Under the pieces are notes generated by a model, which worked only from the letters and a program-made list of their open reading frames with translations, had not been told where the DNA came from and made no database searches. From positions 128,908,601-128,972,225 of the forward strand of contig NC_068984.1 of the NCBI RefSeq assembly GCF_001194135.2: a stretch of 63,625 bases of DNA, read 5' to 3'. The DNA is from Octopus bimaculoides. Its lineage: Eukaryota. Positions within the stretch are counted from its first letter, which is position 1. The number at the start of each line of letters is the position of its first letter. The translations under genes were made by a program, and so were the position numbers. This document shows positions 13,387 to 63,625 of the stretch, in pieces.

Positions 13387-13392
<6 letters not shown>

Positions 13393-30355: not shown

Positions 30356-30374
30356 ACGTATTATTATTGATAAT

Positions 30375-32654: not shown

Positions 32655-32825
32655 GTGGCGAGTGTGCAAAATAATTGGCACGCCGGACAAAATGCTTAGC
32701 AGTATTTCGACCATCTTTAGGTTCTGAGTTCGAGTTTCGTCGAGGTCGACTTTGCCTTTCATCCTTTCAAAATCGATAAAAGAAGTACCGGTTACGTACT
32801 GGGTCGACGTAATCGATTTGCCCAT
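32655..32825 (+). mobile_element. Family A SINE
   Basis: Head and core homologous to 32261-32491. Confidence 0.8.
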
Positions 32826-33250: not shown

Positions 33251-34270
33251 TGGACTGCAAACTCACCGCATCCCACTTTGATGACTCAATTCTTGTTTGC
33301 GCCTGCCACCCCATTGTTCTTGTTAGAAAAAAATATTATGCAAATGCTAGCTCGTTTCCCGGACTCGCTATCCAGAGCACCCTTTTGGCAATCAACATAA
33401 ATGATTCGAATAAATCATTAATTTCAAATGTACTTCATTTTCTTCAGTGACAGTCGTGATGTGAAAAATTCAACAATTATCTGACCAATTATGTCTAAGC
33501 TCCAGAGGTGATAATTAAGGTTTTACAGGCTAATAATTTTATCTTTCGTGTTTCCAAATTACGCAAATTTTCAATTAGTTCCAACTCTCATCGTCGCCAG
33601 GCGTCATCTACGTGAATATGAACATTGTTCCTGACTGAATTTGAACATGGAATATTCATGTCTAAGCAAGGAATATTGACATCTTTGTCCAAAACCACTG
33701 GGAAATGGAAAAACTAATAACGGTCGGTGATCGAAATGATTGAAATGTGTAAGTGAAACTACAAAATACAAAATATGAAGTTAATAAGAAGGGAAAAACC
33801 AATCAATGTATCCAACTTCCTGAATTCCGCTATAATTGCTTTGCGCTCTAAAGAAATACTGATTACTTGGCTGAAGTCATGATACTATTGATGTAGCTAT
33901 CATTCAGTAAACATTATGGCGAAAATAGGAAGAATAACTGCGCATATCATATTTTATCTTTATCTAAATGAGAAATTTTAGGATGAAAATTAATTGGATT
34001 AACAGTCGAACAAAACCAAGCCTTTATATGGTTTACTAGAAATAGCAGAAAAAATTCCCCGAGACTGCACCTCGCCATGTTAAAAAGGTACGCATTGGAT
34101 AATGTAGTCCTAGTTATGAAATATCTAAAATAAAGATGAGATGGTCATACCTTGAATTTTTTTGACCATTTATCTGCTCTAGCAGAGCTGGCCACAAGTT
34201 AAACAGCACAAGCATCAACAATAGCATAATTTTATCAATAATATATTAAAGATATATAAAGTTACTTCCA

Positions 34271-34654
34271 TGGAGGCGCAATGGCCCAGTGGTTAGGGCA
34301 GCGGGCTCGCGGTCATAGGACCGCGGTTTCGATTCCCAGATCGGGCGTTGTGAGTGTTTATTGAGCGAAAATACCTAAAGCTCCACGAGGTTCCGGCAGG
34401 GGATGGTCGCGAACCCTGCTGTACTCTGTCACCACAACTTTCTCTCACTCTTACTTCCTGTTTCTGTTGTGCCTGTAATTCAAAGGGTCAGCCTTGTCAC
34501 ACTGTGTCACGCTGAATATCTCTGAGAACTACGTTAAGGGTACACGTGTCTGTGGAGTGCTCAGCCACTTGCACGTTAATTTCACGAGCAGGCTGTTCTG
34601 TTGATCGGATCAACTGGAACCCTCGACGTTGTAAGCGATGGAGTGCCAACAACA
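34271..34654 (+). mobile_element. tRNA-derived SINE family C, full length
   Basis: A box TGGCCCAGTGG, B box GGTTTCGATTCC, tail ...gagtgccaacaacaa, and 12-bp TSD aaagttacttcc at 34258-34269 / 34655-34666. Confidence 0.93.
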
Positions 34655-35343
34655 AAAGTTACTTCCTCTAGATGTATCCGTGCTTGTTTATGTATGTAGT
34701 CAAGTGTAAATTATGGAGTTATATACTGAGGGGAAATGCAAGTAAATCTGCACTAAAATGTTTAACGTTAGTTCAGCAAGTAACTGAACCGTTTTGTTAT
34801 ATAATATGCCATTTATTTAATATTTCTCATCTTGTGAATTGCAGAAACACAGTAAATATTTGACAATCACATAATGTCTGGGTAAGCAAAAGTGGGAGAG
34901 ACAAAAGGGGAAGAGAAAAAGAAGGAAAAGGGATGCAAAAAAGTAAGAGAGGGAGAAAACAAAGGGATAACGCAAAAACAAAAAGGCGGAGAGAAAAAGA
35001 AAGAAATAGAAAAGGAAGAAGGTGAGAGAGGGAGAGAGAGAATGAAAGAGGGAAGAGAGAGAATGAAAGAGGGAAATAAAATAGATAGATAGAAGATATG
35101 ACATCTTTAAACAGCAACTTATGGAAAGTAAACAGGGGGAAAAAAAACCCTATTTATTTTGAAGTATTCTGAAGAGATGTTTATGAATTCAGATTCATAG
35201 TTTTGCTTGCTTCTCTTTTATAATTTACTTCTTTTTAATTAAAAATGTTCTTATTTTCAACAATGTTAGTTTTATAAGATCGCAAAATGTTTTTAATGTT
35301 GGCGTTGAGTGATGGAAATGGTTCGGTATGAGAGAGCGCGAGA

Positions 35344-40945: not shown

Positions 40946-41381
40946 GGATCTTTTTTAAAACGGGGGCCACATTTTTCATTAACGAAACACTTTGAAACTT
41001 GGAACACTGGTAGAATGTGTCATATAAAACATCTTTTTCTCTTAGTCTTCTTTTAAAAAAAAGAAATCCCTAAGTTATTTCATGTTAAAGTTGTCGTATT
41101 TCTGTAATTTCAACCAATCACTGACGTCCATTCAGCCGATATACATTAAGTGCCGACTATATAAACAAACGATTCTGAAACAATTCTATCGGAGATAGGG
41201 TTAGGGTTAGGGTTAGGGTTAGGGTAAAACAGTAAATTTAAAAAGAAAAAAGCAAAACGAAGCTATGAAAATTAAATACGCTTTACACTGCTTAATCAGC
41301 CAAAGTTTGAAAGTCTTTCGGTACCAAAAACACTACGTAAAACATTAATGAAAAATGTGGCCCCCGTTTTAAAAAAGATCC
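40946..41381. mobile_element. 436-bp MITE with 37-bp perfect TIRs and 8-bp TSD (Merlin-like)
   Basis: TIR ggatcttttttaaaacgggggccacatttttcattaa at both ends, TSD atagattc at 40938-40945 / 41382-41389, inserted in a family A SINE. Confidence 0.9.
41196..41225 (+). repeat. Interstitial telomeric-type repeat (TTAGGG)4 plus partial unit
   Basis: tagggttagggttagggttagggttagggt, inside the MITE. Confidence 0.93.
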
Positions 41382-41998: not shown

Positions 41999-42076
41999 TC
42001 AGTTTGTGTTTGTGCATGCATATGTATATGTGCATGTGTCTGTGTGTGTGTGTGTGTGCACGCGCGCATGTATATA

Positions 42077-43089
42077 CGAGGGGAAGTCAAAAAATTATCC
42101 GTACCTTCGCCATAACATATCTTTATTACTGTCACACTGCCTTCTGCGCATGCGCACTTATAGTTGGTACTATTGTGATCACGTGATCGAAGTTTGATCC
42201 TGATCGGGCCATTTTTCTTTCTGGCTTCACAGTGTAAGCATAAAAGGTCCACTAAGCAATGTGCGCCGAAGAAGAACAAAGAGCAGTGATCCGATTTCTG
42301 TGGTCAGGTGTGCCAGGTGCTAAAATTCATCGGAAGCATTTAGCACATTTGGTTAATGGTTTCAACGGTCTGGGCGGCTGTGGGTGAGCATGCATTGTAA
42401 TGCAACACCAAGATTTTCTTCAATAAGCTTCGGTGTTTGTTGCGAATTGCTGGCTTTATTTGGTTGGCCAGCAAAGCACTATATCTCGTACTGTTGATCG
42501 TACACCCTTTTCCAGGTAATCTTCCAGTATAGCCCATTTGAGTCCTCAAAAAAGCGTTAGCATCACTTTTCCGGCAGAAGACTGAGTCTTGCATTTCTTC
42601 GTCGCTGGCGAGCCAGGATGTTTCCACTCCAGACTCTGTCTTTTGGTTTTTGCCTCATAATAACGGACCCACGTTTCATCTCCTGTGACTACTCTGTTCA
42701 AAAATTCCTCGCCCTCATACTTGTAGCGATCGAGTAAACGTTGGCAAACCTCAAGATATTTGCGGTTGTTCTCTGCAGTAAGCTCTCTTGACACCCATCT
42801 TGCACAGACTTTATGGAAGCCGAGTTCATCGTGGATGATTTTCAGCGCCTAACACCCCTTCAGACTATAGAAATCTAATCACTGCTCTTTGTTCTTCCTT
42901 GGTACACATTGCTAGTGGAGCGGCCATGCTTACACTGTAAAGCCAGAAAGAAAAATAGCGCGACGAAGCCCAAACTTTGATCACGTGACCACAATAAGTA
43001 TCGACTATAAGCATACATGCGCAGAAGGCAGCGTGACAATAATAACGATAAGTTATGGCAAAAGTGCGGATAATTTTTGACTTCTCCCC

Positions 43090-43090
<1 letters not shown>
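42077..43090 (-). mobile_element. Rearranged mariner element bounded by two inverted 5' ends
   Basis: TA|cgagggaagtcaaaaaattatccg on the left and cggataatttttgacttctccccg|TA on the right. Both ends are followed by the same 5' UTR and transposase start. Confidence 0.88.
42336..42927 (-). pseudogene. Mariner (DD34D family) transposase pseudogene
   Basis: MAAPLAMCTKEEQRAVIRFL*...KVCARWVSRELT...VTGDETWVRYYEAKTKRQSLEWKHPGSP...SAGKVMLTLF, with stops, an internal deletion and a truncated C-terminus. Confidence 0.9.
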
Positions 43091-43144
<54 letters not shown>

Positions 43145-44135: not shown

Positions 44136-44855
44136 GGCGCTGGCATGGCCTTGTGATTAAGAAGCTAGCTTTGGAACTATGTGGTTTCTGGTTCAATTCA
44201 ATTGCGCGGCCCCTTGGGTAAATGTTTTCTCCTGCTGTAAACCGAGGCCGATAAATGTCTTGTGAGTGAATTTCGTTGATTGAAACGGTGTGAAAGCCCA
44301 TCGTATATCTTGGCACTCCATCGGTTACAACGACGAGGGTTCCAGTTGATCCGATCAACGGAACAGCCTGCTCGTGAAATTAACGTGTAAGTGGATGAGA
44401 ACTCCACAGACATGTGTATCCTTAATGTAGTTCTCGGGGAGATTCAGCGTGACACGGAGTGTGACAAAGCCGGCCCTTTGAAATACAGGTACAACAGAAA
44501 CAGGAAGAAATAGTGAAAGAAAGTTGTGGTGAAAGAATATATCAGGGTTCGCCACCACCCACTGCCGAAGCTTTGTGGAGCTTTAGGTGTTTTCGCTCAA
44601 TGAACACTGACAATGCCTGGTCTGGGAATCGAAACTACGATCCTATGACCGCGAGTCCACTGCCCTAACAACTGGGTCATTGCGCCTCCACTTAATCGTA
44701 TATACCTACATGTGTATGTATTTATGTGCGTGCCTGTGTGTGTATTTATGTGTGTGCATGTGTGTGTGTATGCGCGCGTCTGTGTTTGTATGCGTCTGTG
44801 GCTTCTTGTTTGTGTTTGTCCCGACCCACACCGTTTGACAACCGGAAGTGGTTAA
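44136..44855 (+). mobile_element. Family B SINE interrupted by a family C SINE
   Basis: Head at 44136-44308. The GT-rich middle and tail resume at about 44695. Confidence 0.72.
44310..44690 (-). mobile_element. tRNA-derived SINE family C nested in family B
   Basis: Homologous over its length to 21346-21729. atcgtatat is repeated at both junctions. Confidence 0.88.
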
Positions 44856-48125: not shown

Positions 48126-48529
48126 TTATCCATTTATTTAAGCCTTTTTTCTTTACTTATTCCATATATAACAATATTGGTTACAACACACTTCCAGATC
48201 AATATTCTTGCCAAACAAATTCAAAATCGAGCGTAAGAGCGATATTGATTTGCTAAATAAATTTTAAGAATCAGTAAAGTGTACCACAACTACGCTTTGT
48301 ATTTACTCAAAACCTTTTTGGTATTACGTTCCTAAGTCGTCTTATTACCTTACAGAAGGCAATAAGACAATAAAACAGAAAATAACGAACAAGCCAAAAA
48401 TAACGAACAGAGATGACAGGAAAGTTTCTAGCTATTGTTAAATGAAAAGAAAGCGTACACTTGGCAACGAACTCTATTCTTTAATCTATAATCGTTCATC
48501 AACTATACCTCCTTCCTCCATTTCTTCCT

Positions 48530-48702
48530 TCATTTCTTCTTCTTCTTCTTCTTCTTCTTCTTCTTCTTCTTCTTCTTCTTCTTCTTCTTCTTCTCCTCCT
48601 CCTCCTCCTCCTCCTCCTCCTTCTTCTTCTTCTTCTTCTTCTTCTTCTTCTTCTTCTTCTTCTTCTTCTTCTTCTTCTCCTTCTTCTTCTTCTTCTTCTT
48701 CT
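48530..48702 (+). repeat. (TTC)n-(TCC)n-(TTC)n microsatellite
   Basis: Direct reading. Confidence 0.96.
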
Positions 48703-49257
48703 ACATTGTCGTGGCGTCTCTTATATTCCTTCTGGCCTAGTGGCGTACATTGGCTGGTAATATGCCATACAGTTTCACCGTTATGTCCACATATTCTGAA
48801 CTTATCACTTTCTGCTGTGTTGTCTATTCTGTATTTTATGTAGTTTGTTCTTAGTTCTTGCTCTTGAGCAGTACAGATTAGAGCCTCCGTTTCCGGTTTT
48901 AAATCACTTTTAGTCATCCACAGCCATGTTTTTTCTCTGTCTGTCTTATTTTCAACATCCCTATGAAATTGACCATGCATTCTTTTCTTTGCCCACCTAT
49001 TTTCAGTTTCATTCGTTGTCAATTTCTTGTATAGTGCTTTATCTTTGCAATCTTTCATCCTACACAAGCCTGACCTTCCTACTTCTAATAATAGCAGTTC
49101 TGTGGCATTTTTAACTTCTGCTCTAAGGCTGTGTTCGCATCCAATAAGTCCTATTCTCCCTCTTTTTCTTGGTACATACAGTCTGTCTGTGTCACTTTTT
49201 GGGTGGAGTGACCTATATCTAGCTAACAAATTCCTTGTCTTTCTGTCTAAGCTGTTT

Positions 49258-49260
<3 letters not shown>
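48703..49260 (-). pseudogene. Dong/R4 retrotransposon ORF fragment (post-RT region to zinc knuckle)
   Basis: LDRKTRNLL...LHPKSDTDRLYVPRKRGRIGL...MHGQF...LKPETEALICTAQEQELRT...FRICGHNGETVWHITSQC...YKRRHDNV. The 5' junction lies in (TAA)n. Confidence 0.9.
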
Positions 49261-49334
<74 letters not shown>

Positions 49335-49363
49335 CATTATTATTATTATTATTATTATTATTG
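49260..49363 (+). repeat. (ATT)n microsatellite
   Basis: Direct reading. Confidence 0.97.
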
Positions 49364-49680
49364 AGTGATACAGCAGTGTATGCCTCCTATTAGTACTAGT
49401 ATTATTTTAATTATTTTACAGAAAAATGTGGAAAATGAAATATCTAATTAGAATTTTAAACCGAAGGGCGTCTGAAATGTCAATCGTAAAGATTTCAAAA
49501 CGTGAAATTTCTTTTGAATTATTAAAAATTGCCAGGAACAAAGGATCTCATATTTTAGATATGATAAAGAGCAAATAATTAATGTTGCTTTTTCCGGGTT
49601 ATAATTGATATTTGGAGAAAACATTTCTTAGGTTTCACTTGGAATTAATGATGATGACGATGATGATGATGATGATGATT

Positions 49681-49809: not shown

Positions 49810-50298
49810 AATAATGATATTCAGCCCACACAATTGACATTAAAAATCTTAAATTGGTTTCCGAATTATAATTGCACCTTAAGACGTAATCTTTCACAGC
49901 CAGGTTGGTTTCGCTCATCTGCTGGTAAATTCCTTCCCGAGCCACGTGAAAAAATCTGTGGTCTGTTTTAAAATGCCAACATACACACTGATATTTAAAG
50001 TGACTTTGAATAGTATAAAGAGCGTAAAAGCTTAGATAACCTACACAAGATATATAGCCGTCTACATTGACCTTTTGACATAGATTGGTGCTTTCATAGC
50101 TTTATATTGGAGGAATTTCAAAGAGATAACGCTAGAGATAAATAAGGGCGTGAAGATGTGGCTAATGTTAGACCCGCAGAAATGTAATAATGGTTGGATA
50201 GAAAAATATTCTATCTGTAAAACATTGCAATTTCATTTGAACGACCATTTTTTTAATTCGTGCACAAAATGATGGAAAGGGAGGAACTGAATAACTAT

Positions 50299-50628
50299 TG
50301 TTGTTGGCACTCCGTGAAATTAACGTGCAAGTGGCTGAGCACTCCACAGACACGTGTACCCTTAACGAAGTTCTCGGGGATATTCAGCGTGACACAGTGT
50401 GACAAGGCTGACCCTTTGAATTACAGGCACAACAGAAACAGGAAGTAAGAGTGAGAGAAAGTTGTCGTGAAAGAGTACAGCAGGGTTCGCCACCATCCCC
50501 TGCCGGAGCCTCGTGGAGCTTTAGGTGTTTTTGCTCAATAAACACTCACAACGCCCGGTCTGGGAATCGAAACCGCAATCCTACGACCGCGAGTCCGCTG
50601 CCCTAACCACTGGGCCATTGCGCCTCCA
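50299..50628 (-). mobile_element. tRNA-derived SINE family C with a ~55-bp deletion near the 3' end
   Basis: TSD gaataactat at 50289-50298 / 50631-50640. The deletion joins ctccgt to gaaattaacg at a cgt microhomology. Confidence 0.9.
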
Positions 50629-53600
50629 CAGAATAACTATAACAACAACTATAAAAAATGAAATTATCATCGTGTAGCGTCCTTTTCCTGTATTTTTTCT
50701 TCTTATGAGAATGACATCTACTACCCCGGACTTACTTCTTACTCGTCATTCTTGAACTCCCTTCGTGCTTGTCTTATGAAATAAGGCAGAAACCAAACAT
50801 TCATTCTTTTAAATAATGTACAACTGACGAACCCCCCACTAAGTAACAGATCCTACCCACTTCAAGCAAATTCTTTAAGTTCCATATATATCCCAGCCAG
50901 AAAACCTGTCTTCAACTTTTTCAATCCGGAAGCGTCCTTTTTATTTCTGAGCAAGACTTGTACACTAAATATAATAGTAGACTGAGTCATAAAGCATAGT
51001 TTTCGTTATTTTTCCACGTCCGTGTGGAATGCATGTAATGTTGAAGTAAGTTAATATTTGAAATATCAATAATGACAGCCTAAACTGTGATATTTTGCTT
51101 AATGATCAATGAAGGAATAATGAAGTGGATTCAGTAATGAAGTACTATAATTCATGATTGATATAGCCCTTTTTACTAACTTCAGTCAGTAATTTGATCT
51201 ATTAATTGAGCTGTGGTATTAAACAATAAAGAAAGCATTAGATTAGACAACATATTCCATCTCGGTAATTTTCCCAGAGATCTGTAATCAAAGTTTTGGT
51301 ATGCAAACACCTTGGTTTATAACAGCTTCTTGTGACAGATAGATTACACTACATTCTTTTGAAAATTATAAGGCCTGCTGATTCCCTATTTTTTGTCCAC
51401 AAAAATATTATACAGAAAGAAGAGACGTTTACACTACCAGTCTAATACATACTATTAGTTTAAAATCTATAGATATATTTATAATACAGTATAGCATTGA
51501 AACAAAACATTGTTAATGTACCAGTAAATTTATTATTCGAACTGCCAAGAATGTTTTATGCATGCAAATCACAACAACCGGTTTACGTTAACCCTTAGTA
51601 ATGGCGAGTTTATAAGCAGTGTCTCTGTGGGTCACTGTGGGTAATTAAAAGAGAGTATTCTGTCACTAAGTAGACTGAAACTGCTCCGGATAACTCCTTT
51701 ACTTTCTACAAATATATCGAAAATATTGTATTTTCAACAGGCGCTTATAAGTTACGTATATCTATCTATACATACAGTGTTATCTAATATCTATAGTTAT
51801 TCTGTTGTACACTATATCCATGATTTACGAATGTTTTCCTTTAGGTGTACCATATTAGACTATTTATTGCTTAACTAATGGAGAGGCCTCTGTTGTTTAA
51901 AATACATTTGTGTATTCAATTTAATATTTTTGTTCAATTGTAGTACTTTCTTTTAAGTTTATTACTCAAGAAAAAAACAACACATTTCCAAATGTAAAAA
52001 TGGTTTTATTCGCTTTTTTTCTCTGTCTGCTTTGGTTTAAAACTCACACTGATCAAAGTCTGACTTTATTCAAGCAGAAATCCTATGAGATTTTGTGGAC
52101 AGTAGCCGACAGAACAATTTCAAATAGACATCAGCAGTCATAGAATCAACGATTTCCATCTGTGAGGTCTGTCCGTATTCAGCAGTCACTATCTTCAATG
52201 ATACAAATTAAGAATACATACTAATAGAGAATGCTTATTTTATCTTTTTTTATTTTTATAAACTTGCATTGATACAGAGTCGGCTATTTAAATAATATTT
52301 ATATTTTTATATGCACTCAGAATAATTTTCTCGGTAAGATTGGAAATAATATTATAACCAAGATTGTATCCTGTACATTGTCTTATAGTGTTCATTGAAC
52401 AAGGAACTCTACCAATTCAAAATAAATAATTGCCTGACTCAGAGAAATGTTTCGATATTTCATTATTTACTTTTTTTACATGTATATGAATTGACGCTTG
52501 TTTTCGCTGGCAGCGAAGGAGAGATGTTTGATAAAAGAAAGTATGCTAAGTGGTTTGTGGTTTGTATTAAATGTAAAACAAAACAAAACAAAAAAACTTA
52601 TCGAAAAGAAAATAATTTAAGAGCCTGAAGACGTCTATTCACAGTAACGAAGAATATGGAGGAGAATTGAATTTTTCCTGATATTTGTATAAGAAGCTTG
52701 GGATTGGACGAAATGTATGTGATAGAAAAGAGAAAGATTATGGAAATTTTATGCAGTATAGTGAATAAAAATATGGACAAGGCCGTCTAGAAGAAAAGTA
52801 TCATTCACTTTACATATTTACACTTTCGAAATACGAACAATTGTCTCTTTTATCATCTCCCCGTCTTCTATTTGAGTTCTACAAATATATCTTCTCTGAA
52901 CTTTACAACATATATAGTGAACATCGGAATTCAACCGAAAACCTCGTCCCTCTTCGACACTTAACCCAAGACACTGTACTACGAACGTTTGATAAATTCT
53001 TCTCTTCTATGAATTATATCCGGGCGAAACTTCCATTCTACGTGTTTTCTGAGTTCCCAGTTTGAATAAATCTACTTTAATCATTTTTATCTTCGGTGAA
53101 CCTAACACATCCTTATGAATTCTGTTTAGGCTCTGCAAGGATAATAGAAAAAGTTGCACATTTTTAACAATGACTGAAATTTCGCTACTCTGTTAACCAG
53201 TTAGCAATCTCACACGAGCTGACAGCACAGAAAACCAATCTCTATATCAAGATCAAATAGAGAAAACTAATGATATTTACTGATCTAGTGCACCATTGGA
53301 AGGACAACATATACACAAAGCAGTTTGAACTATTCTGTCTGAGATTCGAGACTTATGCAAACACTCATCAGTATCAAATGACAGAAATCAGTGATGAAAC
53401 AAAATGATTTGATTAATGATGGCATGGTTAGTATCGCAATCATATTTCTGAAGGTTCGGTTTTGTTGTTCGATAGATCCCATTATGGTGGATAACCCTTT
53501 CGGATCAAGTAGCTTATTTCTGATGTATTTATTCATAACTTCTTTGAGAATCAAAGTTAAATATTACATTCAATACAGAGTATAGACATAGCTGCGCATA

Positions 53601-54892
53601 GTGGCGAATACCAGCGGTGTCAATCAGATTCTGTAGTAAGAAGCGAAAGAGGGAACAGAAAGTATAGACCATGCACATAAACTGAGTTTCTAAAATGTTG
53701 CATTCATACAGGAGTCAAAAATTCATAGTACCGGCATAATGCCTCTCGCAAGGTTTAATTGCAAAACATAATTATTATAGTAAAATTCGAAATCCAAACC
53801 GAAGATAATTATTACGGTGTAATTCAAAATCAGAACACATAAAACGAAGCTAAATATTTGAAGGTATTTAATGAAATGCAAGTCACTTTCTCTCAGCTCC
53901 CCTTCCTCAAGAATGGGCACAAATGCACATCATCGACCTTGGTGGCTAATTTACTGCGTTTCTTTAAGTATTTTCTTTTTAATTTTAGTAATGCAAATGA
54001 CCAATCCTTATATAGGAAATTGATTATATAATTAAGGTTATGTGTAACTTTGAGAGGATCAATATATGGCAATTTTTACTGATTACAAACGACGTATAGA
54101 AGAGTGAAAGGGAATGAATGATGGCTTTGGTTTAAAGTAACTGACCCTCTAAAATATTTTAATATCAATAAAGGTTATTTATAGGAGATGAATACGAAGA
54201 AATGCAATGACGTGTGGATCGCACGAAGGAATCAGCTTCAAAAGGACGAGAGTGTTACAAAGGCATAAGGAATTATTATGCTACAAAGGCATAAAACTGC
54301 CAACAATATAAAGGCTAATTCGAAGATATAGAATGGATTTAAATGGATGAATTACTCTAAATGCCATTTTCCAATCACAATATCAGAACTTTCATTGTAT
54401 ACTTTATTACAGTGATCAATATGGTGCTTTGTTGCAATTTTTTTCATGTATCAGACAAGTTTTAATCATTTCAGTTTCATTAGTTCACCAATTCTTTTTT
54501 CTCTTTTTTACTTTTTGATATTCTGGAATTGAAATAAAGATAGTAATTTAATAGAAGTAGTCACTTTTTAAGGGATCTTATTTTTATTCTATGCTGACAT
54601 GTTATGAAATACTGTCACTTTCTTTTATAATATACATAAGTCCTGAGTTAAGAAAAGCCATATAACACTAAAAAAACGTTTTGTTCCCTTCCATGTTATT
54701 TTCCTTTAAATTTCATTCAATATATTACATATTTATTTCTCACAACACACTAGAATGGCCTACCGATAATAACACTTGTTTTTCGAACTCTTGGATTATT
54801 TTCGTTTATATTTAATAAGGGGAATCTTTTCCGAAATATGATAGAAACAATATATGTAAGGGAATGCAATATCTTGCATTTGATTTGATTTA

Positions 54893-55293
54893 TTCTTTTA
54901 TACTCTAGGCACAAGGCCTGAAATTTTTGGGGAGTGGGGAGCCAGTCGATTAGATCGACCCCATTACGCAACTGGTACTTAATTTATCGACCCCGAAAGG
55001 ATGAAAGGCAAAGTCGACCTCGGCAGAATTTGAACTCAGAACTAAAGACAGACGAAATACCTATTTCTTTATTGCCCACAAGGGATTAAACATAGAGGGG
55101 ACAAATAAGGACAGACAAAGGGATTAAGTCGATTACATCGACCCCAGTGCGTAACTGGTACTTAATTTATCGACCCCCGAAAGGATGAAAGGCAAAGTCG
55201 ACCTCGGCGGAATTTGAACTCAGAACGTAAAGACAGACGAAATACCGCTAAGCATTTCGCCCGGCGCGCTAACGTTTCTGCCAGCTCGCCGCC
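54893..55293 (-). mobile_element. Head-to-tail family A SINE dimer (full long-tail copy fused to a headless short-tail copy)
   Basis: Junction ...gacagacgaaatacc|tatttctttattgcccacaaggg at about 55041. Confidence 0.85.
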
Positions 55294-55960
55294 TTCAATT
55301 TGATTATATCTACTGATATCGCCTTACCTATTTTCTGAAATTTCTCACCTATATTGTTCAAAGATTTAAAAACAGCACTTATATCATTTACTCGGTACAG
55401 CTCAAGCAAATTACAATACTATTTTATATTTATTTCCTGTCCTACATTCGTTTGAAATACGGTCAAACACCTCGTACTTTCATCACTTTTAACTGAATTA
55501 TTTTTCGCGCTGTCATTTTTCTTTGTTCAGTCATCATGGTATACATCCATAGCTCCCTGCCTCTTTCATTATCAGCGAGCCATCTTATATTGTATCAGCT
55601 CTCTTTTCCTGTTCACATTACTTTTATCGGTTTATCAAACAGTGTTTCAGTATTCATTTATTGACGTCTATGAATTATATAGCTATTGATGTGCAAATAC
55701 ATCTTATTTGTACTGATATGAGAGAATTGATACAAAGCATTAATTATTTATACCTGTTAATTAGGATTTCAAATGTCGATAAGTAGCCGAATCTATGATA
55801 TTCCAAACGATTCGTGTTCAAGAAGTATTAGTTCCTCAATTAGTAACTGTTAAATAAATCATAATCTATCAGTCTAAGATTACATAAAAAATATTAATTA
55901 CAGTAAAGACACTAATAAGCATTTAGCTAATAACTAAAATAACGAAATGTTGATGTCGAT

Positions 55961-56306
55961 CAGGGGTTCTCAACCATATTTTACCAATGGACCCCTTTGA
56001 TTACAACATTATTCTGGCGGACCCTTATAGACATTCGATGTTTAAAACCTAGTTTTATAGAAACTTTCAAAATCCTTATTTTGTTTTTAACGCATTAACT
56101 TGTATAGTTTGAACTATGTAAAACGTTAGAGAAAGAAATCTAGCTCTTTCTTACATTACATAACAATATATACATATAAAGCAAAATGTTTACAGGAGCC
56201 CTTAAAACAATATTGTGAATCCCGAATTTACTCTTCTATTGTGTGGACCCCCGAAAATCTTACATAGACCTTCGGGGGCCATATGAACCCCGGTTGAGTA
56301 CCACTG
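55961..56306. mobile_element. hAT-type MITE, 346 bp
   Basis: TIRs caggggttctcaacc and ggttgagtaccactg; 8-bp TSD atgtcgat / atgtagat. Confidence 0.88.
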
Positions 56307-57087
56307 ATGTAGATGAAGCTGTATCTTTTTCATACGGTGTGTATTTTTATAATTGAAACATAGCGCATTGTTTGGAGGGATTAAGCATTAAACTTTGGTT
56401 TGGAAATAGTGCTAACATGAAAGTATATTTTAAAACCGATATTGGAAAATAAGACTATGTAAACTTGCACTTACAAACAATGGAGATGCGCCTGGCAGAA
56501 TAAATTATGTACAGATAACTAGATGAATACATCAATAGGTTTTATAGCCGTAGATACATACATACATACATATAGAAAATGTGTTTGTGTATGTGTGTGT
56601 GCTACAAATTGGTGCAAACAGATGGAGCAGGAAACAAATAAATAGATAAACAGAACGATAGTGAAAGAACATGCCAGGAATGAAATTTAATGGCCACAAG
56701 CTGTTATTTCCATATGGAATATTCTCACAGCGTAAATGTTGAAGAGGTGGTAAGCTGCGAGGTAACAAAAGAAAGAATACAATGGAGTTTGTGCTGCTGA
56801 TATGGAGGAAAGATACTACTTCTAAAAAGTGATCTGTTAGATTTACATTATATACTTCATAATAATTTGAATTCAAGTCACAAGTGCATTGTGATTATTA
56901 ACCATACATGACCTGCTTTAAGTACTGCAACCTACACGTTAATTTGATCGGAGAAATAAGTTGTTTACAGCAGCAGTTCTTCGTTTTTATTGTATATGTA
57001 TATAATAAAAAAGAACTACTGTATGAGATGTTGAATGATCTAGGCCGATCTGACATCGAGATAAAAATGTTTTGTGTCTTGAAATAA

Positions 57088-57196
57088 TGTAAACAGGAAC
57101 TGACGTCAGTTGAATAGAAATGAGAAATTACTTCGAAAGTTCAATTCTACGAAATAGAAATAAAAGAGGGTAACCGTACTGTGGGATAAAGTAAGT
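57088..57196 (+). promoter_or_regulatory. Possible promoter and first exon: forkhead site, full CRE overlapping a TCAGTT initiator, GTAAGT donor
   Basis: TGTAAACA at 57088-57095, TGACGTCA at 57101-57108 within a 14-bp palindrome, GTAAGT at 57191. Motif coincidence only. Confidence 0.22.
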
Positions 57197-57373
57197 GTAT
57201 GTGTGTATGTGTGATGGTGTAGGGGTTACAATTGAAAGTGAAAAAGAAATGTTGTGAAGAAAACAACGAAATAACATATGCATTTATGTTTTCTAAAAGA
57301 GTCTATCTTTCTTGATAGAGAGAGAACGTATGTTCTTATTATTGAAATTGAATGTTATCCATATGCAATTATG

Positions 57374-57417
<44 letters not shown>

Positions 57418-57821
57418 ACAGCACAAACATAGACTCACGTTTGTAATGCTACATGAAGAACACCATCTCTGTGTCTACATTTCTGAATATCTTCAGAATG
57501 TTTCAAAAGTGAAAGAGGTTACTTCCCTGATAAACTCACCTCTGAAATATCTAATGTGAGGGATCAAAATGTAGAGGGTTAAATCTCAGTTACGTCTCAC
57601 AAATAACGTATACTGACATTATCTCTAACGTATCTCAAGCAAAAGGGCACGATATGAAAGGTTACTTCCTCATTAATCTCAACTCAAAACAATCTGAAGT
57701 GAAGGTAATGATCAGATGGAATGCCTCCTTGTTCCCTTAAATCCAAAATACCGAAAGTAACAGGCGCTATTTATAGATTGTTTCCTTATCAAATTCGCGT
57801 TTGATATATTTAAAGTATAAA

Positions 57822-58033
57822 GACGGCGAGCTGGCAGAAACGTTAGCACGCCGGGCGAAATGCTTAGCCGTATTTCGTCTGCCGTTACGTTCTGAGTTCA
57901 TATTCCGCCGAGGTCGACTTTGCCTTTCATCCTTTCGGGGTCGATAAATTAAGTACCAGTTACATACTGGGATCGATCTAATCGACTGGACCCTCCCCAA
58001 AAATTTCGGGCCTCATACCTAGAGTAGAAAAGA
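57822..58033 (+). mobile_element. Family A SINE, short-tail type, young
   Basis: 18-bp TSD atatatttaaagtataaa at 57804-57821 / 58034-58051. Confidence 0.92.
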
Positions 58034-58059
58034 ATATATTTAAAGTATAAATGGTATTA

Positions 58060-58230
58060 AGGTGGCATTCTGGCAGAATCGTTAGTACGCCGGACAAAAT
58101 GCTTAGCGGTATTTTGTCCGTCTTTACGTTCTGGGTTCAAATTCCGTCGATGTCTACTTTGCTTTTCATCCTTTCGGGATCGATAAAATAAGTACCAGTT
58201 GAGCATTGAGATCGGTGTAATCGACATACT
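58060..58230 (+). mobile_element. Family A SINE
   Basis: Head and core homologous to 57822-58033. Confidence 0.82.
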
Positions 58231-59324
58231 CCCTTTTTGAAATCAATATATTTAAAATGAAAGGTACAATAGGGGTGGTAGTATTTTCCTGTTGACCCTC
58301 TCTTTAACATATTGAGGGCACTTCATGAAGAGCTTCTTAACTGTTCATCCATCCGGGTAATAACATATCTAAACTAGAGTACGATTTTTAAATCTACTTC
58401 CATGGCACCTTAGATGTAGGGGTGGATTTCATTTCAAACATATATAAATTGAAAGATATATTCCGGATAGGTACTTCTCTGTTTATCTTAGCTTTGATAT
58501 TTCCAAAATGAAAGGGCATTATTGCTGAGGCTACATCTCTTTAACCTCAGATCTAACAAATTTAAAGTAAACGGTACATTCTGGAAGGTTACGTTTCTTT
58601 GGACTTCTGCTCTAACTTTATTAAAATAAAGGCTAAAATTTGTAGGATTATATTTATGCTGCATTGATATCATACCTAATTCGAAGGTGCAAATTGTTTA
58701 GTTACTTTTTTTCTAATCTAAACTTATCTAAACAGAAGGACACAAACAATTTAGTCAAATACTTTTCTACAGACTTCAGTTTAAATATGTCTAAGATAAA
58801 TGGCACAATGTGGAAGGCTACATTAATGCTAACCTTTATTATAATGTATCTGTAGCGAATGGTCAATCTGAAGAGTTATTTCTATATTAAAATCAGCTGT
58901 GATAAAGGCAAAATAATGGACCAACATGTTTCGTTATTTCTCTGTGGATATAATCTCTGAGACATCTGGAGTAAAGGATCACAGTACGAAAAATGTCTTC
59001 CCGTTAAACTTGGAATCTGGACTGGTTACTTTTCTGCTGATGTCTAAGTTATCAAACGTGATAAACACAAATTGGTGGGTTACTTTTTCTACTGGTCTCA
59101 TCTCTTGCAGCATATAGATTGTTACTTCTTTGTTGAGCTCAGCTATGTTTTATCTGAAATGAAGGCACACTTAGAAAGGTAAATATCAACATTCAAGAAA
59201 CAGCCAGAAAGATGGCCAAAGGGCATCGAACAAAATGGAAAATATGTAATTGATTCAAGTTCTTCTTTGAATGAAAACAAAATGACTTTTATTTTACACT
59301 TAAAAACCGAAACTACTTCCTTGT

Positions 59325-59465
59325 CAACCCAATATTTATTTTATCGATTCCAAAAGAAGAAATGGTAAAGCTGACTTCGGCAGAATTTGAACTCAGAACG
59401 TAAAGACGGACGAAATACCGTTAAACGTTTTGACCGGTGTGATAATGATTCTGTAAGATAGCTGC
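59325..59465 (-). mobile_element. Family A SINE, partial
   Basis: ggcagaatttgaactcagaacgtaaagacggacgaaataccg. Confidence 0.75.
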
Positions 59466-60959
59466 CTAATCAGAAAGAAATATTATCAGCAAATAGAGTA
59501 AATTTGAAACTCAACCTGCTAGAAATAACAACCAAATCTCCCTTGAATCACATACTGCTCGCTCTCCTTGAAAAGTAAAGGGCATTGGCTAATTAATCCT
59601 AATACAGTTAAAACGAGAAGATGATTGCAACTGGACTATCTTTAATTAAAGGTCTGGAGTTAAAGAAAAAAAACCCAGCAAATAATGGCTTCAAAATGTC
59701 TTTTACATTAATTCCACATCCTGTGATCTGTTATATCCTATAAGATCCCACATTCTGTATTATATTCAGATCAAAATATTCACTTGTTGGTTAACTGCCA
59801 CCGTTCTGTCAACATGTCACACTACTATGAAATGTCTATATACACTATACCTTATTGGTTTATTTTTTTCCATTCTATAGATCAAAAAATATTTACCGTT
59901 AAATTTGTTTGGACACTTCTAGCTCCATCATTTCCGAGGGTATTGGAACATCTATTATTGAGATTACAAGCGAAATTCACTTGTAAAATTGTTCATTACA
60001 GAGATGAATGTAGCTATAGTATGATAAAAGGAAAGTGCTTTCACAATGGGTCTTCTTTTGACCAATAACAAGCTAATCTTTGTAAATAAGTGAAAAGCCC
60101 ATTGAACCGAAATTTCAATTGGTGAAGCTTAAAAGTAACTCAATATTTACTAACGGTTATATCAATGGAATAGCGTTTAAGATCATCAGCAATTTCTACT
60201 GTAATTATGTTGACTGCAATTTTGATCCTTAGCTTATCCAATTCCTAAGTGGTCTGGATTATTTTGTTTCTTTTTCATTTCCTCTGCTACCAGGGAAATA
60301 CTATCATGATTTACTACTCGACGCAATCAATACGTAACATCATCAAAGAAATTAAAATCACTCTGTCATGATCTGCTAATAGGAACAGACAATACTTATC
60401 ATCATCATAGGAACTCTAAACGTTGCTGTCATGGTGTATAACCCGCTGCATTTCTCATGGAGGGAGTATACATACCGAATAATTCTTCTTGCAGTTTCAT
60501 ACAAATTACCTCACGAAAAGAGCTGTATTATTGTTCTGCTGTGAGTTGACATCTTCTCCAGCGTATTACGAAGCTTATATATACTTGTTTCTCGAGTGAA
60601 TTAGAAATTTCTATTTGTTGCCATACTTTATTGCACCTAGGAATTATGCTATTTTACTCTTTTACCTGCGAGATGTTGCTATGCTAGGTCTCTGCCATTG
60701 TGCACACATAATTGATATATTTTTGTAGAATCAAGATAATATATTAGTTCCTCTATTGGCATTTCATTCGAGCCGAGATAAATTACATAACCATATAATA
60801 TATCATCATTTGTTTTCATTTATACAACACGCTTATAACATCGTTCCCGATCCATTTTATCTTTCTCTATCTTGTATCTTCCCCTTTCCATTTCAATCTC
60901 GCTATTTTCACAATTATTTTCTTCAACTCCCACGTGACATTTTCATTCATCGCTTTTCT

Positions 60960-60987
60960 TCTCCCCCCCTCTCTCTCTCTCTCTCTT

Positions 60988-61080
<93 letters not shown>
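60960..61080 (+). repeat. (CT)n microsatellite
   Basis: Direct reading. Confidence 0.97.
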
Positions 61081-61206
61081 TACACATATTCAATGTATCT
61101 ATTTCATTTTATCTTCAATCCTGTAGAGAACTCTTTTACATTTCTCATACTTTCTTCATTTCTTAACCATCACTTCTGTTAAGTTAATATTTCCAGTATT
61201 TTTGCG

Positions 61207-61656
61207 ATCTCTGTGGGTGAAGAGGAGATAACCATTTTGTTAGGGGGCGCTGTGAACTACGTCAATGTATTTACACCTATTTGCTTACACCGGGAAATGT
61301 ATCCGTGACAAAACACAGTAAATGGCTTTCTTACGCCTCAACCACTAACGAGTTTGCATTTATACACATCACTACTTGACGCTGTCACTCAGTATCTTAA
61401 TTACGACCAGCCGCTGAATAGTGCAACCAGTCACTGAAAGATGAAGGGAATATCATAAGAGGGACTTGTCTCTCGTGTCAGTTCGCAGCTTCTGCCTTTC
61501 AGGTCTCTGTTACTGAAGAGGAGATAACTACTCCGCAATGCACGCATCCAACAGTCTGGTTAGGGAGCGCTGTGAGTTCACTCGTCGTATTTAAACTTAT
61601 TTATCTACAACGAGATATTTTCTCTATGATAAAATACAGAGAATGGCTTTATTACG
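61207..61656 (+). mobile_element. Retrozyme-like tandem repeat, ~320-nt unit x ~1.5, with a hammerhead at each unit start
   Basis: 61241-61335 aligns with 61561-61656 at roughly 70-75% with a single indel. tgaagaggagataac occurs at 61218 and 61514. Confidence 0.72.
61507..61554 (+). ncRNA. Type I hammerhead ribozyme, near-intact (A13C; 1.1-2.1 mismatch)
   Basis: CUGUU-A-CUGAAGA-GGAG AUAACUA CUCC-GCAA-UGC AC GCAU-C-C-AACAG. Confidence 0.75.
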
Positions 61657-61682
61657 GTTTGGAAAATTCACACACACACACG

Positions 61683-61726
<44 letters not shown>

Positions 61727-61736
61727 NNNNNNNNNN

Positions 61737-61776
<40 letters not shown>

Positions 61777-63021
61777 TATGTGGAGAATTTTAACTGGGGA
61801 AAACTGTCACCTACAGTTGCTTCCGGAGTAAAGGTGGGAGAGAGTTTACTGAGAGATAAAAGAGAAGGTAAATATGAATATATATGTAAATTTGAATGTG
61901 TGTGCATACACACACTCACACACACAAGAATGTATACATGAATATGTGTGTGTGCGTATGTGTGTGTTCTTTCCTATCGATCATTCATTTATTCATTCCC
62001 TGTTAATTGTCATTGCGTCTCCTTGACTTTTCTATTTATACTCGTTTACTCTAGTTAGATTTCCTTAAAAGGAAGCAGTTCTTACCTATAGACAACATTT
62101 CTGCATTGATACATAGCCAGGTGATATTTCTGCAAGATATTTTGCAGCTTCGGTCTGCTTTATGTTTAAGTTAATATTTAAAGAAATTGTTACTTAACGA
62201 GTGTTTTATTACTTATCTTAATTCTCCTTACAAATTACATATTTTCGCTTTCATTTTCCGTCCTCTAACTTCTTTTACGTGACTGAATCTATAAAGCCTA
62301 TACAACATAATGGCAAAATATATCCTTTAAGACTAATCTCCTTTTGTACTTTCAGCGCTATTCAGTTCAATAGAACAGTATCTCAATAGTTAATAGTTTG
62401 ACAACACACATACAAAAAAGAAAGTCCTTAACCTAGATTCTATGAGAAGGAAAAAAAGCGATAACAATTAGAACACAGCAACAAATATTGTCATGAATAA
62501 AAAGCCATGAAATCGAAATCAATAGCAAAAGTTTCATCAAAGGAAATGCATTGTACACCAGAAGAGACGCAGTCGAATTTTCTCTATAGCTGGATTTTAA
62601 ATTCTAATCAGATTAAGAATCATTGATTTTGGTTAACAGGTACACTATTCTCTTGAAAACGGAGTTTGTCTAACATTTGATTTAATCAATCCCAGTATTT
62701 CAACAATCCTAGAGGACTGAGAGACTGTATTAAACATCGGGACGAGTTTAACTTGAAAGCATCTCATATGGCAGTTGCCTAAAATTTAGTTCTTTGTGCA
62801 CGACGCCATTTGTGCTGTATGGAAGAATATCTAGTAATATGGTGACGTACATGCTTTTCCCAAGAGCTTTAACGATGATATGAAGTGAAATGAATTGCTT
62901 TCAAACGGGATTCAAATATAGATTGTGGCATCAGCTCCTTAAAAACTCATATTTCGCTCTATAATTATGGTCAACCTTGAAGATTAATACGAAAGCAAAA
63001 CTAATAATCCTTTCTCTTAAA

Positions 63022-63222
63022 GGTACAAACCTTGAAATTTTGGTGGAGGGGACTAGTCGACTACATCGACCCCAATGTTTCACTGGTATTTAATTCATCG
63101 ACCCCGAAAGGATGAACGGCAAAGTCGACCTCGGCGGAATTTGAACTCAGAACGTATGGATGGACGAAATGCCGCTAAGTATTTTACCCGGCGTGCTAAC
63201 GATTGTGCCAGCTCGAAGTCTT
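63022..63222 (-). mobile_element. Family A SINE, short-tail type
   Basis: ggactagtcgactacatcgacccc...catcgaccccgaaaggatgaacggcaaagtcgacctcggcgg...ccagctcg. Confidence 0.88.
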
Positions 63223-63559
63223 AAAGCAAAACTAATAATGCAAACATTTTTAGACGTTTTAACACATTAAAATCGTTTATAATTTCATTTATAATTTCAG
63301 AGTAGTGAAGATAACTAAGCTGTTAAAAGTCTTGTTTTATTGTGATTTGTTTGCACTAATATCATATTAGAACTGTATTAAAATGTTGTACATATCAACT
63401 GGCTATGTTGAGAAAATATATTCTTTAATACAGCTTTTTTTCGTACGAATGACGTTGACGGGGTCAGTATTTCAAAAATTACTGAAATTTTGGTAGTAAT
63501 TTCTAAGACATTTGAAGAAACTACTTTGTCAATTTCGACCATAGAAATATACCTACGCA

Positions 63560-63567
63560 CGCACGCA

Positions 63568-63625
<58 letters not shown>
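63560..63625 (+). repeat. (CA)n microsatellite running off the window end
   Basis: Direct reading. Confidence 0.97.

What the first reader, a model, noticed from the sequence alone, without database searches (positions are those of the whole stretch)
61207..61656. Retrozyme-like tandem array: ~320-nt unit with a hammerhead at each unit boundary
Seen: a type I HHR at 61507-61554 has CUGAAGA, stem II GGAG/CUCC, stem III AUGC-AC-GCAU, an AUC site and helix I CUGUU/AACAG, with only A13C and one junction mismatch. One unit upstream, its 5' half recurs (ctctgt...tgaagaggagataac, 61209-61232) with the 3' half deleted. The following ~95 nt align between copies (61241-61335 vs 61561-61656). No ORF is present. 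Established: non-LTR retrozymes are ORF-less tandem repeats of roughly 170-400 nt, each with a type I HHR, which self-process to monomers and circular RNAs. They are known from some metazoans, including bivalves. Inference: this is an aged copy of a cephalopod retrozyme or Penelope-mobilised family. The UG/CA pairs in stem III look like compensated CpG decay of CG/CG.
Basis: partly seen in the sequence, partly recalled or inferred. Interest (0 to 1): 0.85.

Follow-up and report, generated by a model that had tools for sequence, protein, structure and literature searches.

The report
Decayed hammerhead-ribozyme repeat in octopus DNA
This is a worn-out, roughly one-and-a-half-unit copy of a small non-coding mobile repeat that once carried a self-cutting hammerhead RNA; it belongs to a known kind of element, apparently not yet described in octopuses, and this copy is almost certainly dead.

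Summary
A type I hammerhead-like motif lies at 61500-61558 (+), with all three helices and one core change (A13C). It is the only such match in the window. Null models expect 0.003-0.007 matches per window.

One period upstream (61204-61239) its 5' part recurs and then breaks off at a 24-nt deletion. About 130 nt align between the two copies at 79% identity.

It is not an array. There are only about 1.45 units of about 320 nt, lying between microsatellites.

New evidence comes from an exhaustive translated search. It found a second, non-orthologous locus (Logan contig L006) that is 68% identical over 323 nt (E 5e-43). That locus also holds more than one unit. It has no ORF, and it carries the canonical GAAA where the window copy has GCAA.

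No RT or GIY-YIG domain lies within 11 kb upstream or 2 kb downstream. The host is an octopus, and octopus genomes carry Penelope-like elements.

Best reading: a dead copy of a non-LTR retrozyme-like, Penelope-derived family (confidence about 0.7).

Not shown: cleavage, RNA circles, long arrays or helix covariation. Rfam models do not see the motif.

The result is ordinary: a new member of a known kind.

The parts
61204..61239 (+). Copy A hammerhead remnant. It reads GCGA-UCU-CUGUG-G-GUGAAGA-GGAG-AUAACCA-UUUU-G12. C3 is mutated to G, and stem II 3' is CUCC>UUUU. A 24-nt deletion starts after 61239 and removes positions 13-17, helix III and the helix I 3' strand.
   Evidence: Sequence; direct repeat D5; BLAST 88% over 25 nt; three-way alignment A1.
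61240..61499 (+). Body of unit A. It is non-coding, and the whole array is 42% G+C. 61240-61335 pairs with 61559-61656. 61348-61499 pairs only with L006 515-664.
61500..61558 (+). Copy B type I hammerhead-like motif.
- Helix I: CAGG/UCUG, a UCU bulge, and CUGUU/AACAG.
- Core: CUGAAGA at 61513-61519.
- Helix II: GGAG/CUCC with loop AUAACUA.
- G12 at 61535, C13 at 61536 (canonical base is A), A14 at 61537.
- Helix III: 61538-61547.
- Predicted cleavage after C17, at 61548.
61559..61667 (+). Partial body of unit B. Homology to unit A and to L006 stops at the (CA)n microsatellite.
60969..61080 (.). (CT)56 microsatellite, 120 nt upstream of the array. This is context, not part of the element.
61669..61773 (.). 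(CA)29, a 10-N scaffold gap (61727-61736) and (TA)18, directly after the array. They are either the insertion target or a later overwrite of the unit's 3' part. The gap means the true downstream sequence is unknown.

Best explanation
This is a dead, more-than-unit-length genomic copy of a small non-coding retroelement of about 320-345 nt per unit. The element carries one type I hammerhead ribozyme per unit. It is a non-LTR retrozyme-like, Penelope-derived or Penelope-mobilised family in an octopus genome.

Inferred life cycle of the ancestral element, taken from the published model for such elements and not shown here:
- A multimeric transcript cuts itself after C17 of each hammerhead. With a 4-bp helix III and a 2-nt loop, two hammerheads probably pair as a dimer to do this.
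- The monomers of about 330 nt are circularised by a host RNA ligase.
- A Penelope-like RT/endonuclease copies the circle or multimer into a cDNA longer than one unit and inserts it.

After insertion, this copy decayed. The decay includes A13C and a junction mismatch in hammerhead B, a 24-nt deletion plus C3G in hammerhead A, 21% divergence between the units, and a 3' end lost in a (CA)n/(TA)n microsatellite.

Shown here: the motif, the repeat, a second locus, the absence of an ORF, and the octopus host. Inferred: transcription, cleavage, circularisation, and the identity of the mobilising enzyme.
For: 1. The hammerhead-like motif is complete and is the only match in 63 kb on both strands. It remains the only match when two core mismatches and a helix I mismatch are allowed. 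Expected matches per window are 0.003-0.007.
2. The MFE fold gives helices I and II.
3. The motif sits in a direct repeat with a 296-321 nt period.
4. A second locus, L006, shares the unit: 323 columns, 68%, E 5e-43. Its flanks are unrelated, so the family is dispersed.
5. L006 also holds more than one unit: 486-535 matches 831-880 at 78%, period 345. Its array starts at a different point of the unit.
6. At the homologous hammerhead positions, L006 has CUGAAGA...GAAA, a perfect core. Of 13 core positions, 12 are identical between the loci, against a 68% background.
7. The defects of the three copies fall at different places. An intact ancestor is therefore the simplest reading.
8. The longest ORFs are 38 aa and 30 aa. 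G+C is 42% and 39%. No Pfam domain is found in ORFs of 45 aa or more across 50000-63625.
9. The host is an octopus. Octopus genomes carry Penelope-like elements, with an expansion at JC about 0.2 (PMC13282606, PMC8967140). Canonical Penelope-like elements all carry hammerheads (PMC4209133, PMC8557442).
10. The architecture matches the published canonical metazoan type I description: helix I of about 6 bp, helix II of 4 bp, a short helix III and a small loop (PMC4209133).
11. A second, perfect-core hammerhead-like motif at 18429-18481 (-) suggests that such motifs occur in this genome.
Against: - No Rfam hammerhead covariance model matches, even at E<=10 on 81 nt. The same models also miss the perfect-core motif at 18429-18481, so this negative is weak.
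- No compensatory base-pair changes were seen among the three copies.
- In L006, stem II is broken (AGAA/CACC) and helix I is weakened.
- The 61-nt motif and the 316-nt monomer fold no better than shuffles, with z +1.25 and +0.9. Published retrozyme circles are described as highly self-paired.
- Only two loci are known, and neither has two intact units.
- No target-site duplication was established.
- Adjacency to microsatellites is weak evidence, because the window has about 70 microsatellite arrays.
Confidence: 0.7

Rival explanations
1. This is a truncated piece of an autonomous Penelope-like element, not an independent non-autonomous retrozyme. On this reading it is a pseudo-LTR in partial tandem whose RT/GIY-YIG body was lost or never copied.
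For: - Hammerheads of Penelope-like elements lie in their pseudo-LTRs, and most genomic copies are solitary, truncated remnants (PMC4209133).
- Partial tandems are typical of these elements (PMC8557442).
- Retrozymes are reported to be sister to pseudo-LTRs (bioRxiv 10.64898/2026.07.22.740005), so the two readings shade into each other.
- The two arrays end within about 45 nt of the same unit coordinate and differ in 5' extent. That would fit target-primed reverse transcription from a fixed 3' end.
Against: - The hammerhead spacing is about 300-320 nt, not the roughly 3 kb of a full element.
- No RT or GIY-YIG domain is found in 13.6 kb around the site or in selected ORFs elsewhere in the window.
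- L006 has none in 1.4 kb.
- Two coinciding 3' ends are expected by chance about one time in four.
Confidence: 0.15
2. The hammerhead resemblance is a coincidence inside an ordinary unclassified dispersed repeat that tends to duplicate locally. On this reading no ribozyme ever existed.
For: - No Rfam match was found.
- No covariation was found.
- There is no thermodynamic signal.
- No copy has both an intact core and intact helices.
- The descriptor was written after seeing the hit.
- At about 0.005 per 63 kb, a genome of roughly 2.8 Gb would hold a few hundred chance matches.
- Local head-to-tail pairs of other repeats are common in this window.
Against: - Chance expectation is 0.003-0.007 per window.
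- The independent copy L006 has a perfect core at the homologous positions. Its one difference from the window copy falls on the canonical base.
- The helix I extension with a 3-nt bulge was not part of the descriptor, yet it is present.
- A second hammerhead-like motif of the same architecture lies in the same window.
Confidence: 0.13
3. This is a simple local tandem duplication of unique, non-mobile DNA.
For: Only about 1.45 units are present, and there is no other copy in the 63-kb window.
Against: The unit occurs at a second locus with unrelated flanks, and it is again longer than one unit there.
Confidence: 0.02

Closest known systems
Metazoan non-LTR retrozymes (Cervera & de la Pena 2020, PMC7229834; for example in Acropora, Mytilus, axolotl)
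   Same: - Non-coding head-to-tail repeats with a unit in the published range of about 170-400 nt.
- One type I hammerhead per unit.
- Low G+C (39-42%).
- Dispersed copies that are longer than one unit.
- The host phylum (Mollusca) already has a described example, in a mussel.
   Different: - Only 1.45 and about 1.2-1.25 units per locus were seen, not long multimers.
- Every copy is mutated.
- No evidence exists for RNA circles or cleavage.
- The monomer is not predicted to be highly self-paired.
- No paper in the searched library reports such elements in cephalopods.
Pseudo-LTR hammerheads of Penelope-like elements (Cervera & de la Pena 2014, PMC4209133; Craig et al. 2021, PMC8557442)
   Same: - A type I hammerhead in a direct repeat of a retroelement.
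- Partial-tandem insertions.
- Many decayed solitary copies.
- Octopus genomes carry Penelope elements (PMC8967140, PMC13282606).
   Different: - No RT/GIY-YIG ORF lies between or beside the repeats.
- The spacing is about 320 nt instead of about 3 kb.
- This motif has a real helix III (3-4 bp) and a 4-bp helix II. The 'minimal' Penelope variants have no helix III and a 7-8 bp helix II.
Classical type I hammerheads of satellite-like repeats (Schistosoma Sm-alpha, newt satellite 2; Rfam RF00163)
   Same: - Overall architecture.
- From my own knowledge of the Schistosoma ribozyme: a proximal helix I, a 3-nt bulge on the 5' strand and a distal helix I, a 4-bp helix II with an A-rich loop of 6-7 nt, and a short helix III suited to dimer action.
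   Different: There is no sequence-level or covariance-model match. The core carries A13C.

Membership tests
Hammerhead ribozyme, type I | Conserved core C3 U4 G5 A6 N7 G8 A9 ... G12 A13 A14, with an A15.1-U16.1 pair and H17 | tested here: inconclusive
   Window copy B has every core position except A13, which is C. Copy A has G at C3 and lacks positions 13-17. The homologous L006 copy has a perfect core. No single copy is fully canonical. An intact ancestral core is inferred, not observed.
Hammerhead ribozyme, type I | Three helices around the core, with helix I open and helices II and III closed by loops | tested here: met
   Copy B has helix I of 5 bp plus 4 bp across a bulge, helix II of 4 bp, and helix III of 3 bp with a tetraloop (or 4 bp with a 2-nt loop acting as a dimer). 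The helices are partly lost in L006. No covariation was seen.
Hammerhead ribozyme, type I | Match to curated covariance models (Rfam RF00163 and related models) | tested here: not met
   There is no match at the gathering score or at E<=10. The models also miss the perfect-core motif at 18429-18481, so sensitivity for this variant is doubtful.
Hammerhead ribozyme, type I | Self-cleavage activity | not testable with these tools
   This needs in vitro transcription. Established mutagenesis of the core suggests that A13C would severely impair this copy.
Non-LTR retrozyme | Head-to-tail repeats of about 170-400 nt, from dimers to multimers | tested here: met
   The period is 296-321 nt in the window (1.45 units) and 345 nt in L006 (about 1.2 units). 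These are at the minimal, sub-dimer end of the range.
Non-LTR retrozyme | A type I hammerhead in each unit | tested here: met
   There is one per unit position in A (remnant), B and L006. All are mutated.
Non-LTR retrozyme | No protein-coding capacity, no LTR/PBS/PPT, low G+C | tested here: met
   The longest ATG ORFs are 38 aa and 30 aa, and G+C is 42% and 39%. No Pfam hit was found. PBS and PPT were not specifically searched.
Non-LTR retrozyme | A dispersed multicopy family | tested here: inconclusive
   Two loci with unrelated flanks are known. Copy number is unknown because no octopus genome could be searched at the DNA level.
Non-LTR retrozyme | Expressed as monomer-length linear and circular RNA | not testable with these tools
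   No RNA data are available.
Non-LTR retrozyme | Monomer RNA predicted to be stable and highly self-paired | tested here: not met
   For the 316-nt monomer, MFE is -69.9 kcal/mol against a shuffle mean of -74.7, z +0.88. Decay of this copy could explain the result.
Penelope-like element (autonomous) | An RT plus GIY-YIG endonuclease ORF between pseudo-LTRs | tested here: not met
   No Pfam domain is found in ORFs of 45 aa or more across 50000-63625. Ten selected ORFs elsewhere gave none apart from a weak mariner transposase hit. Heavily degraded ORFs would be missed.

The most novel reading that the evidence does not exclude
Octopus genomes harbour a still-active family of non-LTR retrozymes. 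The family would produce abundant circular RNAs of about 330 nt through hammerhead self-cleavage. This locus and L006 would be dead copies of it. That would extend ribozyme-made circular RNAs to cephalopods, a lineage already noted for unusual RNA biology.
Probability: 0.2. Interest if true: 0.5.

Novelty: new member of a known kind. Interest (0 to 1): 0.33.

Why it matters
If confirmed genome-wide, this would add cephalopods to the animals known to carry hammerhead-bearing small retroelements. It would also give a family sequence with which to look for ribozyme-derived circular RNAs in octopus tissues.

This particular locus is a mutated relic with no sign of present function. Its value is as a pointer to the family, not as a functional element.

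A practical lesson also follows. Rfam's hammerhead models missed both this motif and a perfect-core motif in the same window. Descriptor searches are therefore still needed for these variants.

Tried and rejected
- **Rfam.** I scanned the whole window at the gathering score, then 1.1 kb and 81 nt at E<=10. No hammerhead hit appeared; only microsatellite-driven miRNA noise did.
- **Third unit.** I looked for a third unit copy or a target-site duplication. A 13-nt match (61180 and 62168) and a GCAGCTTC match at 62141 looked promising. Alignment scores equal those of shuffles, and the 12-mer also occurs at 51048. Rejected.
- **Upstream flank.** 61081-61200 against the unit's 3' part, and against L006, gave no similarity.
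- **Word-indexed protein search.** A search with the unit's open frame found nothing. The database holds almost no ORF calls from octopus non-coding DNA, since only 2 hits came back for the abundant SINE-like repeat.
- **DNA pattern scans.** Scans of metagenome and viral collections gave nothing, or three chance hits in bacterial-type contigs (55% G+C in the one contig read, L002).
- **P0062/L007.** This is an unrelated 53-nt minisatellite that matched through a repeated short peptide. Discarded.
- **Exact look-ups.** Look-ups of window ORFs, meant to recover the same genome from other assemblies, were not on record. P0061 was not retrievable.
- **Profile search.** An nhmmer search with a profile built from four unit segments of the two loci (W_A, W_B, L6_a, L6_b) found no more copies in the window or the other loci.
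- **Run accession.** A literature search for the accession of L006 gave no result. The species of L006 is unknown beyond its sharing the octopus SINE-like repeat.
- **Monomer fold.** The fold on either strand is not better than shuffles.

Full report
**1. What is in the sequence**

The window is AT-rich draft eukaryotic DNA (36% G+C, many N gaps). It holds about 70 microsatellite arrays in 63 kb.

- In hammerhead numbering the core is complete except that position 13 is C instead of A.
- The 2.1/1.1 junction is an A.C mismatch.
- The cleavage triplet is AUC.
- Helices II and III are closed by loops and helix I is open, which makes it type I.
- Helix III can be drawn as 3 bp plus a CACG tetraloop. 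It can also be drawn as 4 bp plus a 2-nt loop. That second form cannot close in a monomer but can pair between two ribozymes.

The MFE fold of 61500-61560 gives both parts of helix I and helix II.

**2. Is it more than chance?**

- at most one core mismatch;
- helix I of at least 5 bp, with zero or one unpaired junction base;
- helix II of at least 4 bp;
- helix III of at least 3 bp, closed by A-U;
- position 17 not G.

The descriptor finds this site and nothing else on either strand. It stays the only hit when two core mismatches and one helix I mismatch are allowed.

Expected matches per window:

| Null model | Expected matches |
|---|---|
| 150 dinucleotide shuffles | 0.007 |
| 300 order-3 Markov sequences | 0.003 |
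| 300 order-5 Markov sequences | 0.007 |

The descriptor was written after seeing the hit. A genome of roughly 2.8 Gb would still hold a few hundred chance matches at this rate. The motif alone is therefore suggestive, not proof.

Against it, no Rfam hammerhead model matches. This holds at the gathering score and at E<=10 on 1.1 kb or 81 nt. The motif also folds no better than shuffles (z +1.25).

**3. The repeat**
- 61208-61232 matches 61504-61528 at 88%.
- 61239-61335 matches 61559-61656 at 73.5% over 102 columns, E 2e-9.
- In a global alignment, 131 ungapped columns are 79% identical, giving a JC distance of 0.24.

It has the helix I 5' strand, GUGAAGA (C3 changed to G), GGAG, loop AUAACCA, UUUU (the stem II 3' strand after three C>U changes, still pairing as G.U) and G12 at 61239. 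A 24-nt deletion then removes positions 13-17, helix III and the helix I 3' strand.

The hammerhead 5' half is no better conserved than the unit body: 0.81 against 0.82 and 0.76.

There is no third copy. The sequences upstream (61081-61200) and downstream (61774-62200) align to the unit no better than shuffles. Neither BLAST nor a profile search finds another copy in the window. The locus therefore holds about 1.45 units, not an array.

The array's flanks are these:
- (CT)56 lies 120 nt upstream.
- (CA)29, a 10-N scaffold gap (61727-61736) and (TA)18 lie directly downstream.

Because of the gap, the true continuation is unknown.

**4. Surroundings**
- No ORF above 38 aa lies in the array.
- Stop-to-stop ORFs of 45 aa or more across 50000-63625 have no Pfam hit at E<=0.1.
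- Ten protein-like ORFs elsewhere in the window gave only a weak mariner transposase hit.

No recognisable RT or GIY-YIG endonuclease is therefore nearby. Badly degraded ORFs would escape this test.

**5. Host**

The window is full of a SINE-like repeat of 170-190 nt. Its translation hits a RefSeq model named 'uncharacterized protein LOC128248735 [Octopus bimaculoides]'.

The literature supplies the background:
- Octopus genomes carry Penelope-like elements. Penelope-like elements and LINEs expanded at JC about 0.2, roughly 56 My ago (PMC13282606). Penelope is also part of the old shared coleoid repeat set (PMC8967140).
- All canonical Penelope-like elements carry hammerheads in their pseudo-LTRs (PMC4209133, PMC8557442).
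- Non-LTR retrozymes are non-coding tandem repeats with type I hammerheads and are expressed as RNAs of about 170-400 nt (PMC7229834).
- A 2026 preprint argues that retrozymes derive from Penelope pseudo-LTRs (10.64898/2026.07.22.740005).
- No paper in the searched library reports hammerheads or retrozymes in cephalopods.

**6. A second locus**

DNA-level searching of octopus genomes was not possible. The word-indexed protein search with the unit's open frame found nothing.

The exhaustive HMMER search of the same 83-residue translation returned P0063, with E 2.7e-4 and 52% identity over 58 residues. P0063 is a spurious ORF call on a 1376-bp Logan contig, L006. At the DNA level:
- L006 515-835 aligns with window 61348-61667 at 68.4% over 323 columns, E 5e-43.
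- L006 725-824 also aligns with copy A.
- L006 ends in the same SINE-like family as the window.
- Its flanks are unrelated to the window's flanks, so it is a different insertion.
- L006 also holds more than one unit. 486-535 matches 831-880 at 78%, period 345. The array runs from about 450 to 880, or about 1.2 units. It begins at a different point of the unit than the window array.
- The longest ORF inside it is 30 aa, and G+C is 39%.

The other hit, P0062, is an unrelated 53-nt minisatellite.

**7. The hammerhead in the second locus**

The alignment across the hammerhead is ungapped. L006 665-723 reads CUGAAGA ... GAAA, a perfect core. It has A at position 13, exactly where the window copy has C.

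Of the 13 core positions, 12 are identical between the two loci, against 68% identity across the motif as a whole. I calculate that this would happen by chance about 5% of the time. The single difference falls on the canonical base.

L006 has lost stem II (AGAA/CACC) and part of helix I. Two of its three changed proximal helix I pairs still pair (C-G to U.G, and U-A to U.G).

The formal pair count on the three sequences gives 78% of cells paired in register, against 28-47% when the partners are slid. That comparison is biased, because the structure was read from one of the sequences. No compensatory double changes were seen.

In summary:
- Copy B has the helices but a core mutation.
- L006 has the core but broken helices.
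- Copy A has a deletion.

Independent decay of an intact ancestral hammerhead is the simplest account, but the intact ancestor is inferred.

**8.

The CpG-decay reading of stem III is not supported. The proposed ancestor (ACGC-AC-GCGU) needs C at the second stem III position and G at the ninth.
- L006 has A at both positions, and it shares A with the window copy at the ninth.
- CpG is barely depleted here, with o/e 0.81 in the window and 0.92 in the unit.
- Only one CpG-to-TpA difference separates copies A and B.

The 316-nt monomer is not unusually structured on either strand, with z +0.88 and -0.35. Published retrozyme circles are described as highly self-paired (PMC7761336).

The microsatellite flanks fit the reported microsatellite bias of some Penelope-like clades (PMC8557442). 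With one array per 900 bp in this window, the adjacency carries little weight.

**9. A calibration found in passing**

A second complete type I motif with a perfect core lies at 18429-18481 on the minus strand. It reads UCUC-AGA-UGG / CUGAAGA / GACG-AAGUGA-UGUC / GAA / ACGC-CAG-GUGU / U / CCA-GAGA.
- A perfect-core descriptor expects at most 0.001 such matches per window.
- It is solitary, with no local repeat.
- Its MFE fold prefers a competing hairpin.
- Rfam also misses it at E<=10. This shows that the Rfam negative for the main motif is weak evidence.
- Its architecture is the same as that of the main motif: CUGAAGAG, a 4-bp helix II, a 6-7 nt loop 2, a 4-bp helix III, and a 3-nt 5' bulge in helix I. 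This raises the prior that real hammerheads exist in this genome.

**10. Verdict**

The locus is best read as a dead, more-than-unit copy of a small, non-coding, hammerhead-bearing retroelement family of an octopus. The family is retrozyme-like and probably derived from or mobilised by Penelope-like elements (confidence about 0.7).

On the divergences (my inference):
- The JC distance of 0.24 between units means about 0.12 per unit lineage. On the published octopus TE scale of about 0.0036 per My, that suggests an insertion a few tens of millions of years old, if the units were identical at insertion.
- The intra-locus divergence in L006 is similar (78% identity).
- Inter-locus divergence is larger (68% identity).

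Rivals:
- A truncated Penelope pseudo-LTR (0.15), which shades into the main reading.
- A chance motif in an ordinary repeat (0.13).
- A simple local duplication (0.02), contradicted by L006.

Membership in the retrozyme family is met on anatomy: unit size, one hammerhead per unit, no ORF, low G+C, more than one locus. It is untested on the features that matter most, namely self-cleavage and monomer-length circular RNA. It is not met on predicted RNA compactness.

The element is a new member of a known kind and of modest interest. Its value is as a lead for a genome-wide and RNA-level search in cephalopods.

Noticed in passing
window 18429-18481, minus strand: A second, solitary type I hammerhead-like motif with a perfect core (CUGAAGA ... 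GAA-A ... U-U) and all three helices. It has the same architecture as the main motif. Chance expectation is at most 0.001 per window. It is not detected by Rfam, its MFE fold prefers a competing hairpin, and no repeat surrounds it.
   Followed up: partly
window 22321-22631, 29960-30368, 32263-32819, 54888-55310, 57804-58225, 63034-63222 and others: A SINE-like repeat of 170-190 nt in at least 15 copies at 70-94% identity. It often occurs as head-to-tail pairs about 180-230 nt apart. Its translation matches an O. bimaculoides RefSeq 'uncharacterized protein' (LOC128248735), so that gene model probably contains repeat-derived sequence.
   Followed up: partly
window 21345-21742, 34269-34655 (-), 44310-44702, 50313-50641: A second dispersed repeat of about 390 nt in four copies at 87-95% identity. 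It is unclassified.
   Followed up: no
window 41196-41225: Five tandem copies of TAGGGT, i.e. (TTAGGG)5, an interstitial telomere-type repeat.
   Followed up: no
window 42068-43099: A mariner-type transposase remnant (42343-42848, minus strand; weak Pfam Transposase_1 hit). It lies between 268-nt inverted repeats (42068-42331 and 42834-43099, 81% identity).
   Followed up: partly
window 13387-13654: A 268-nt near-perfect palindrome (95.5% self-complementary) about 100 nt before an N gap. It may be an assembly artefact or a foldback element.
   Followed up: no
window 48489-49406 (-), 17070-17450 (+), 29645-29899 (-): C-terminal fragments of LINE-type reverse transcriptase ORFs. Relatives carry Pfam zf-RVT, and the best hits are on long ENA contigs and in the octocoral Paramuricea clavata. 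None looks like a Penelope element.
   Followed up: partly
L006 1301-1376: The Logan contig that carries the second copy of the unit ends in the same SINE-like family as the window (about 80% identity). This ties the contig to an octopus-type genome. The species of run SRR11869391 could not be established.
   Followed up: partly
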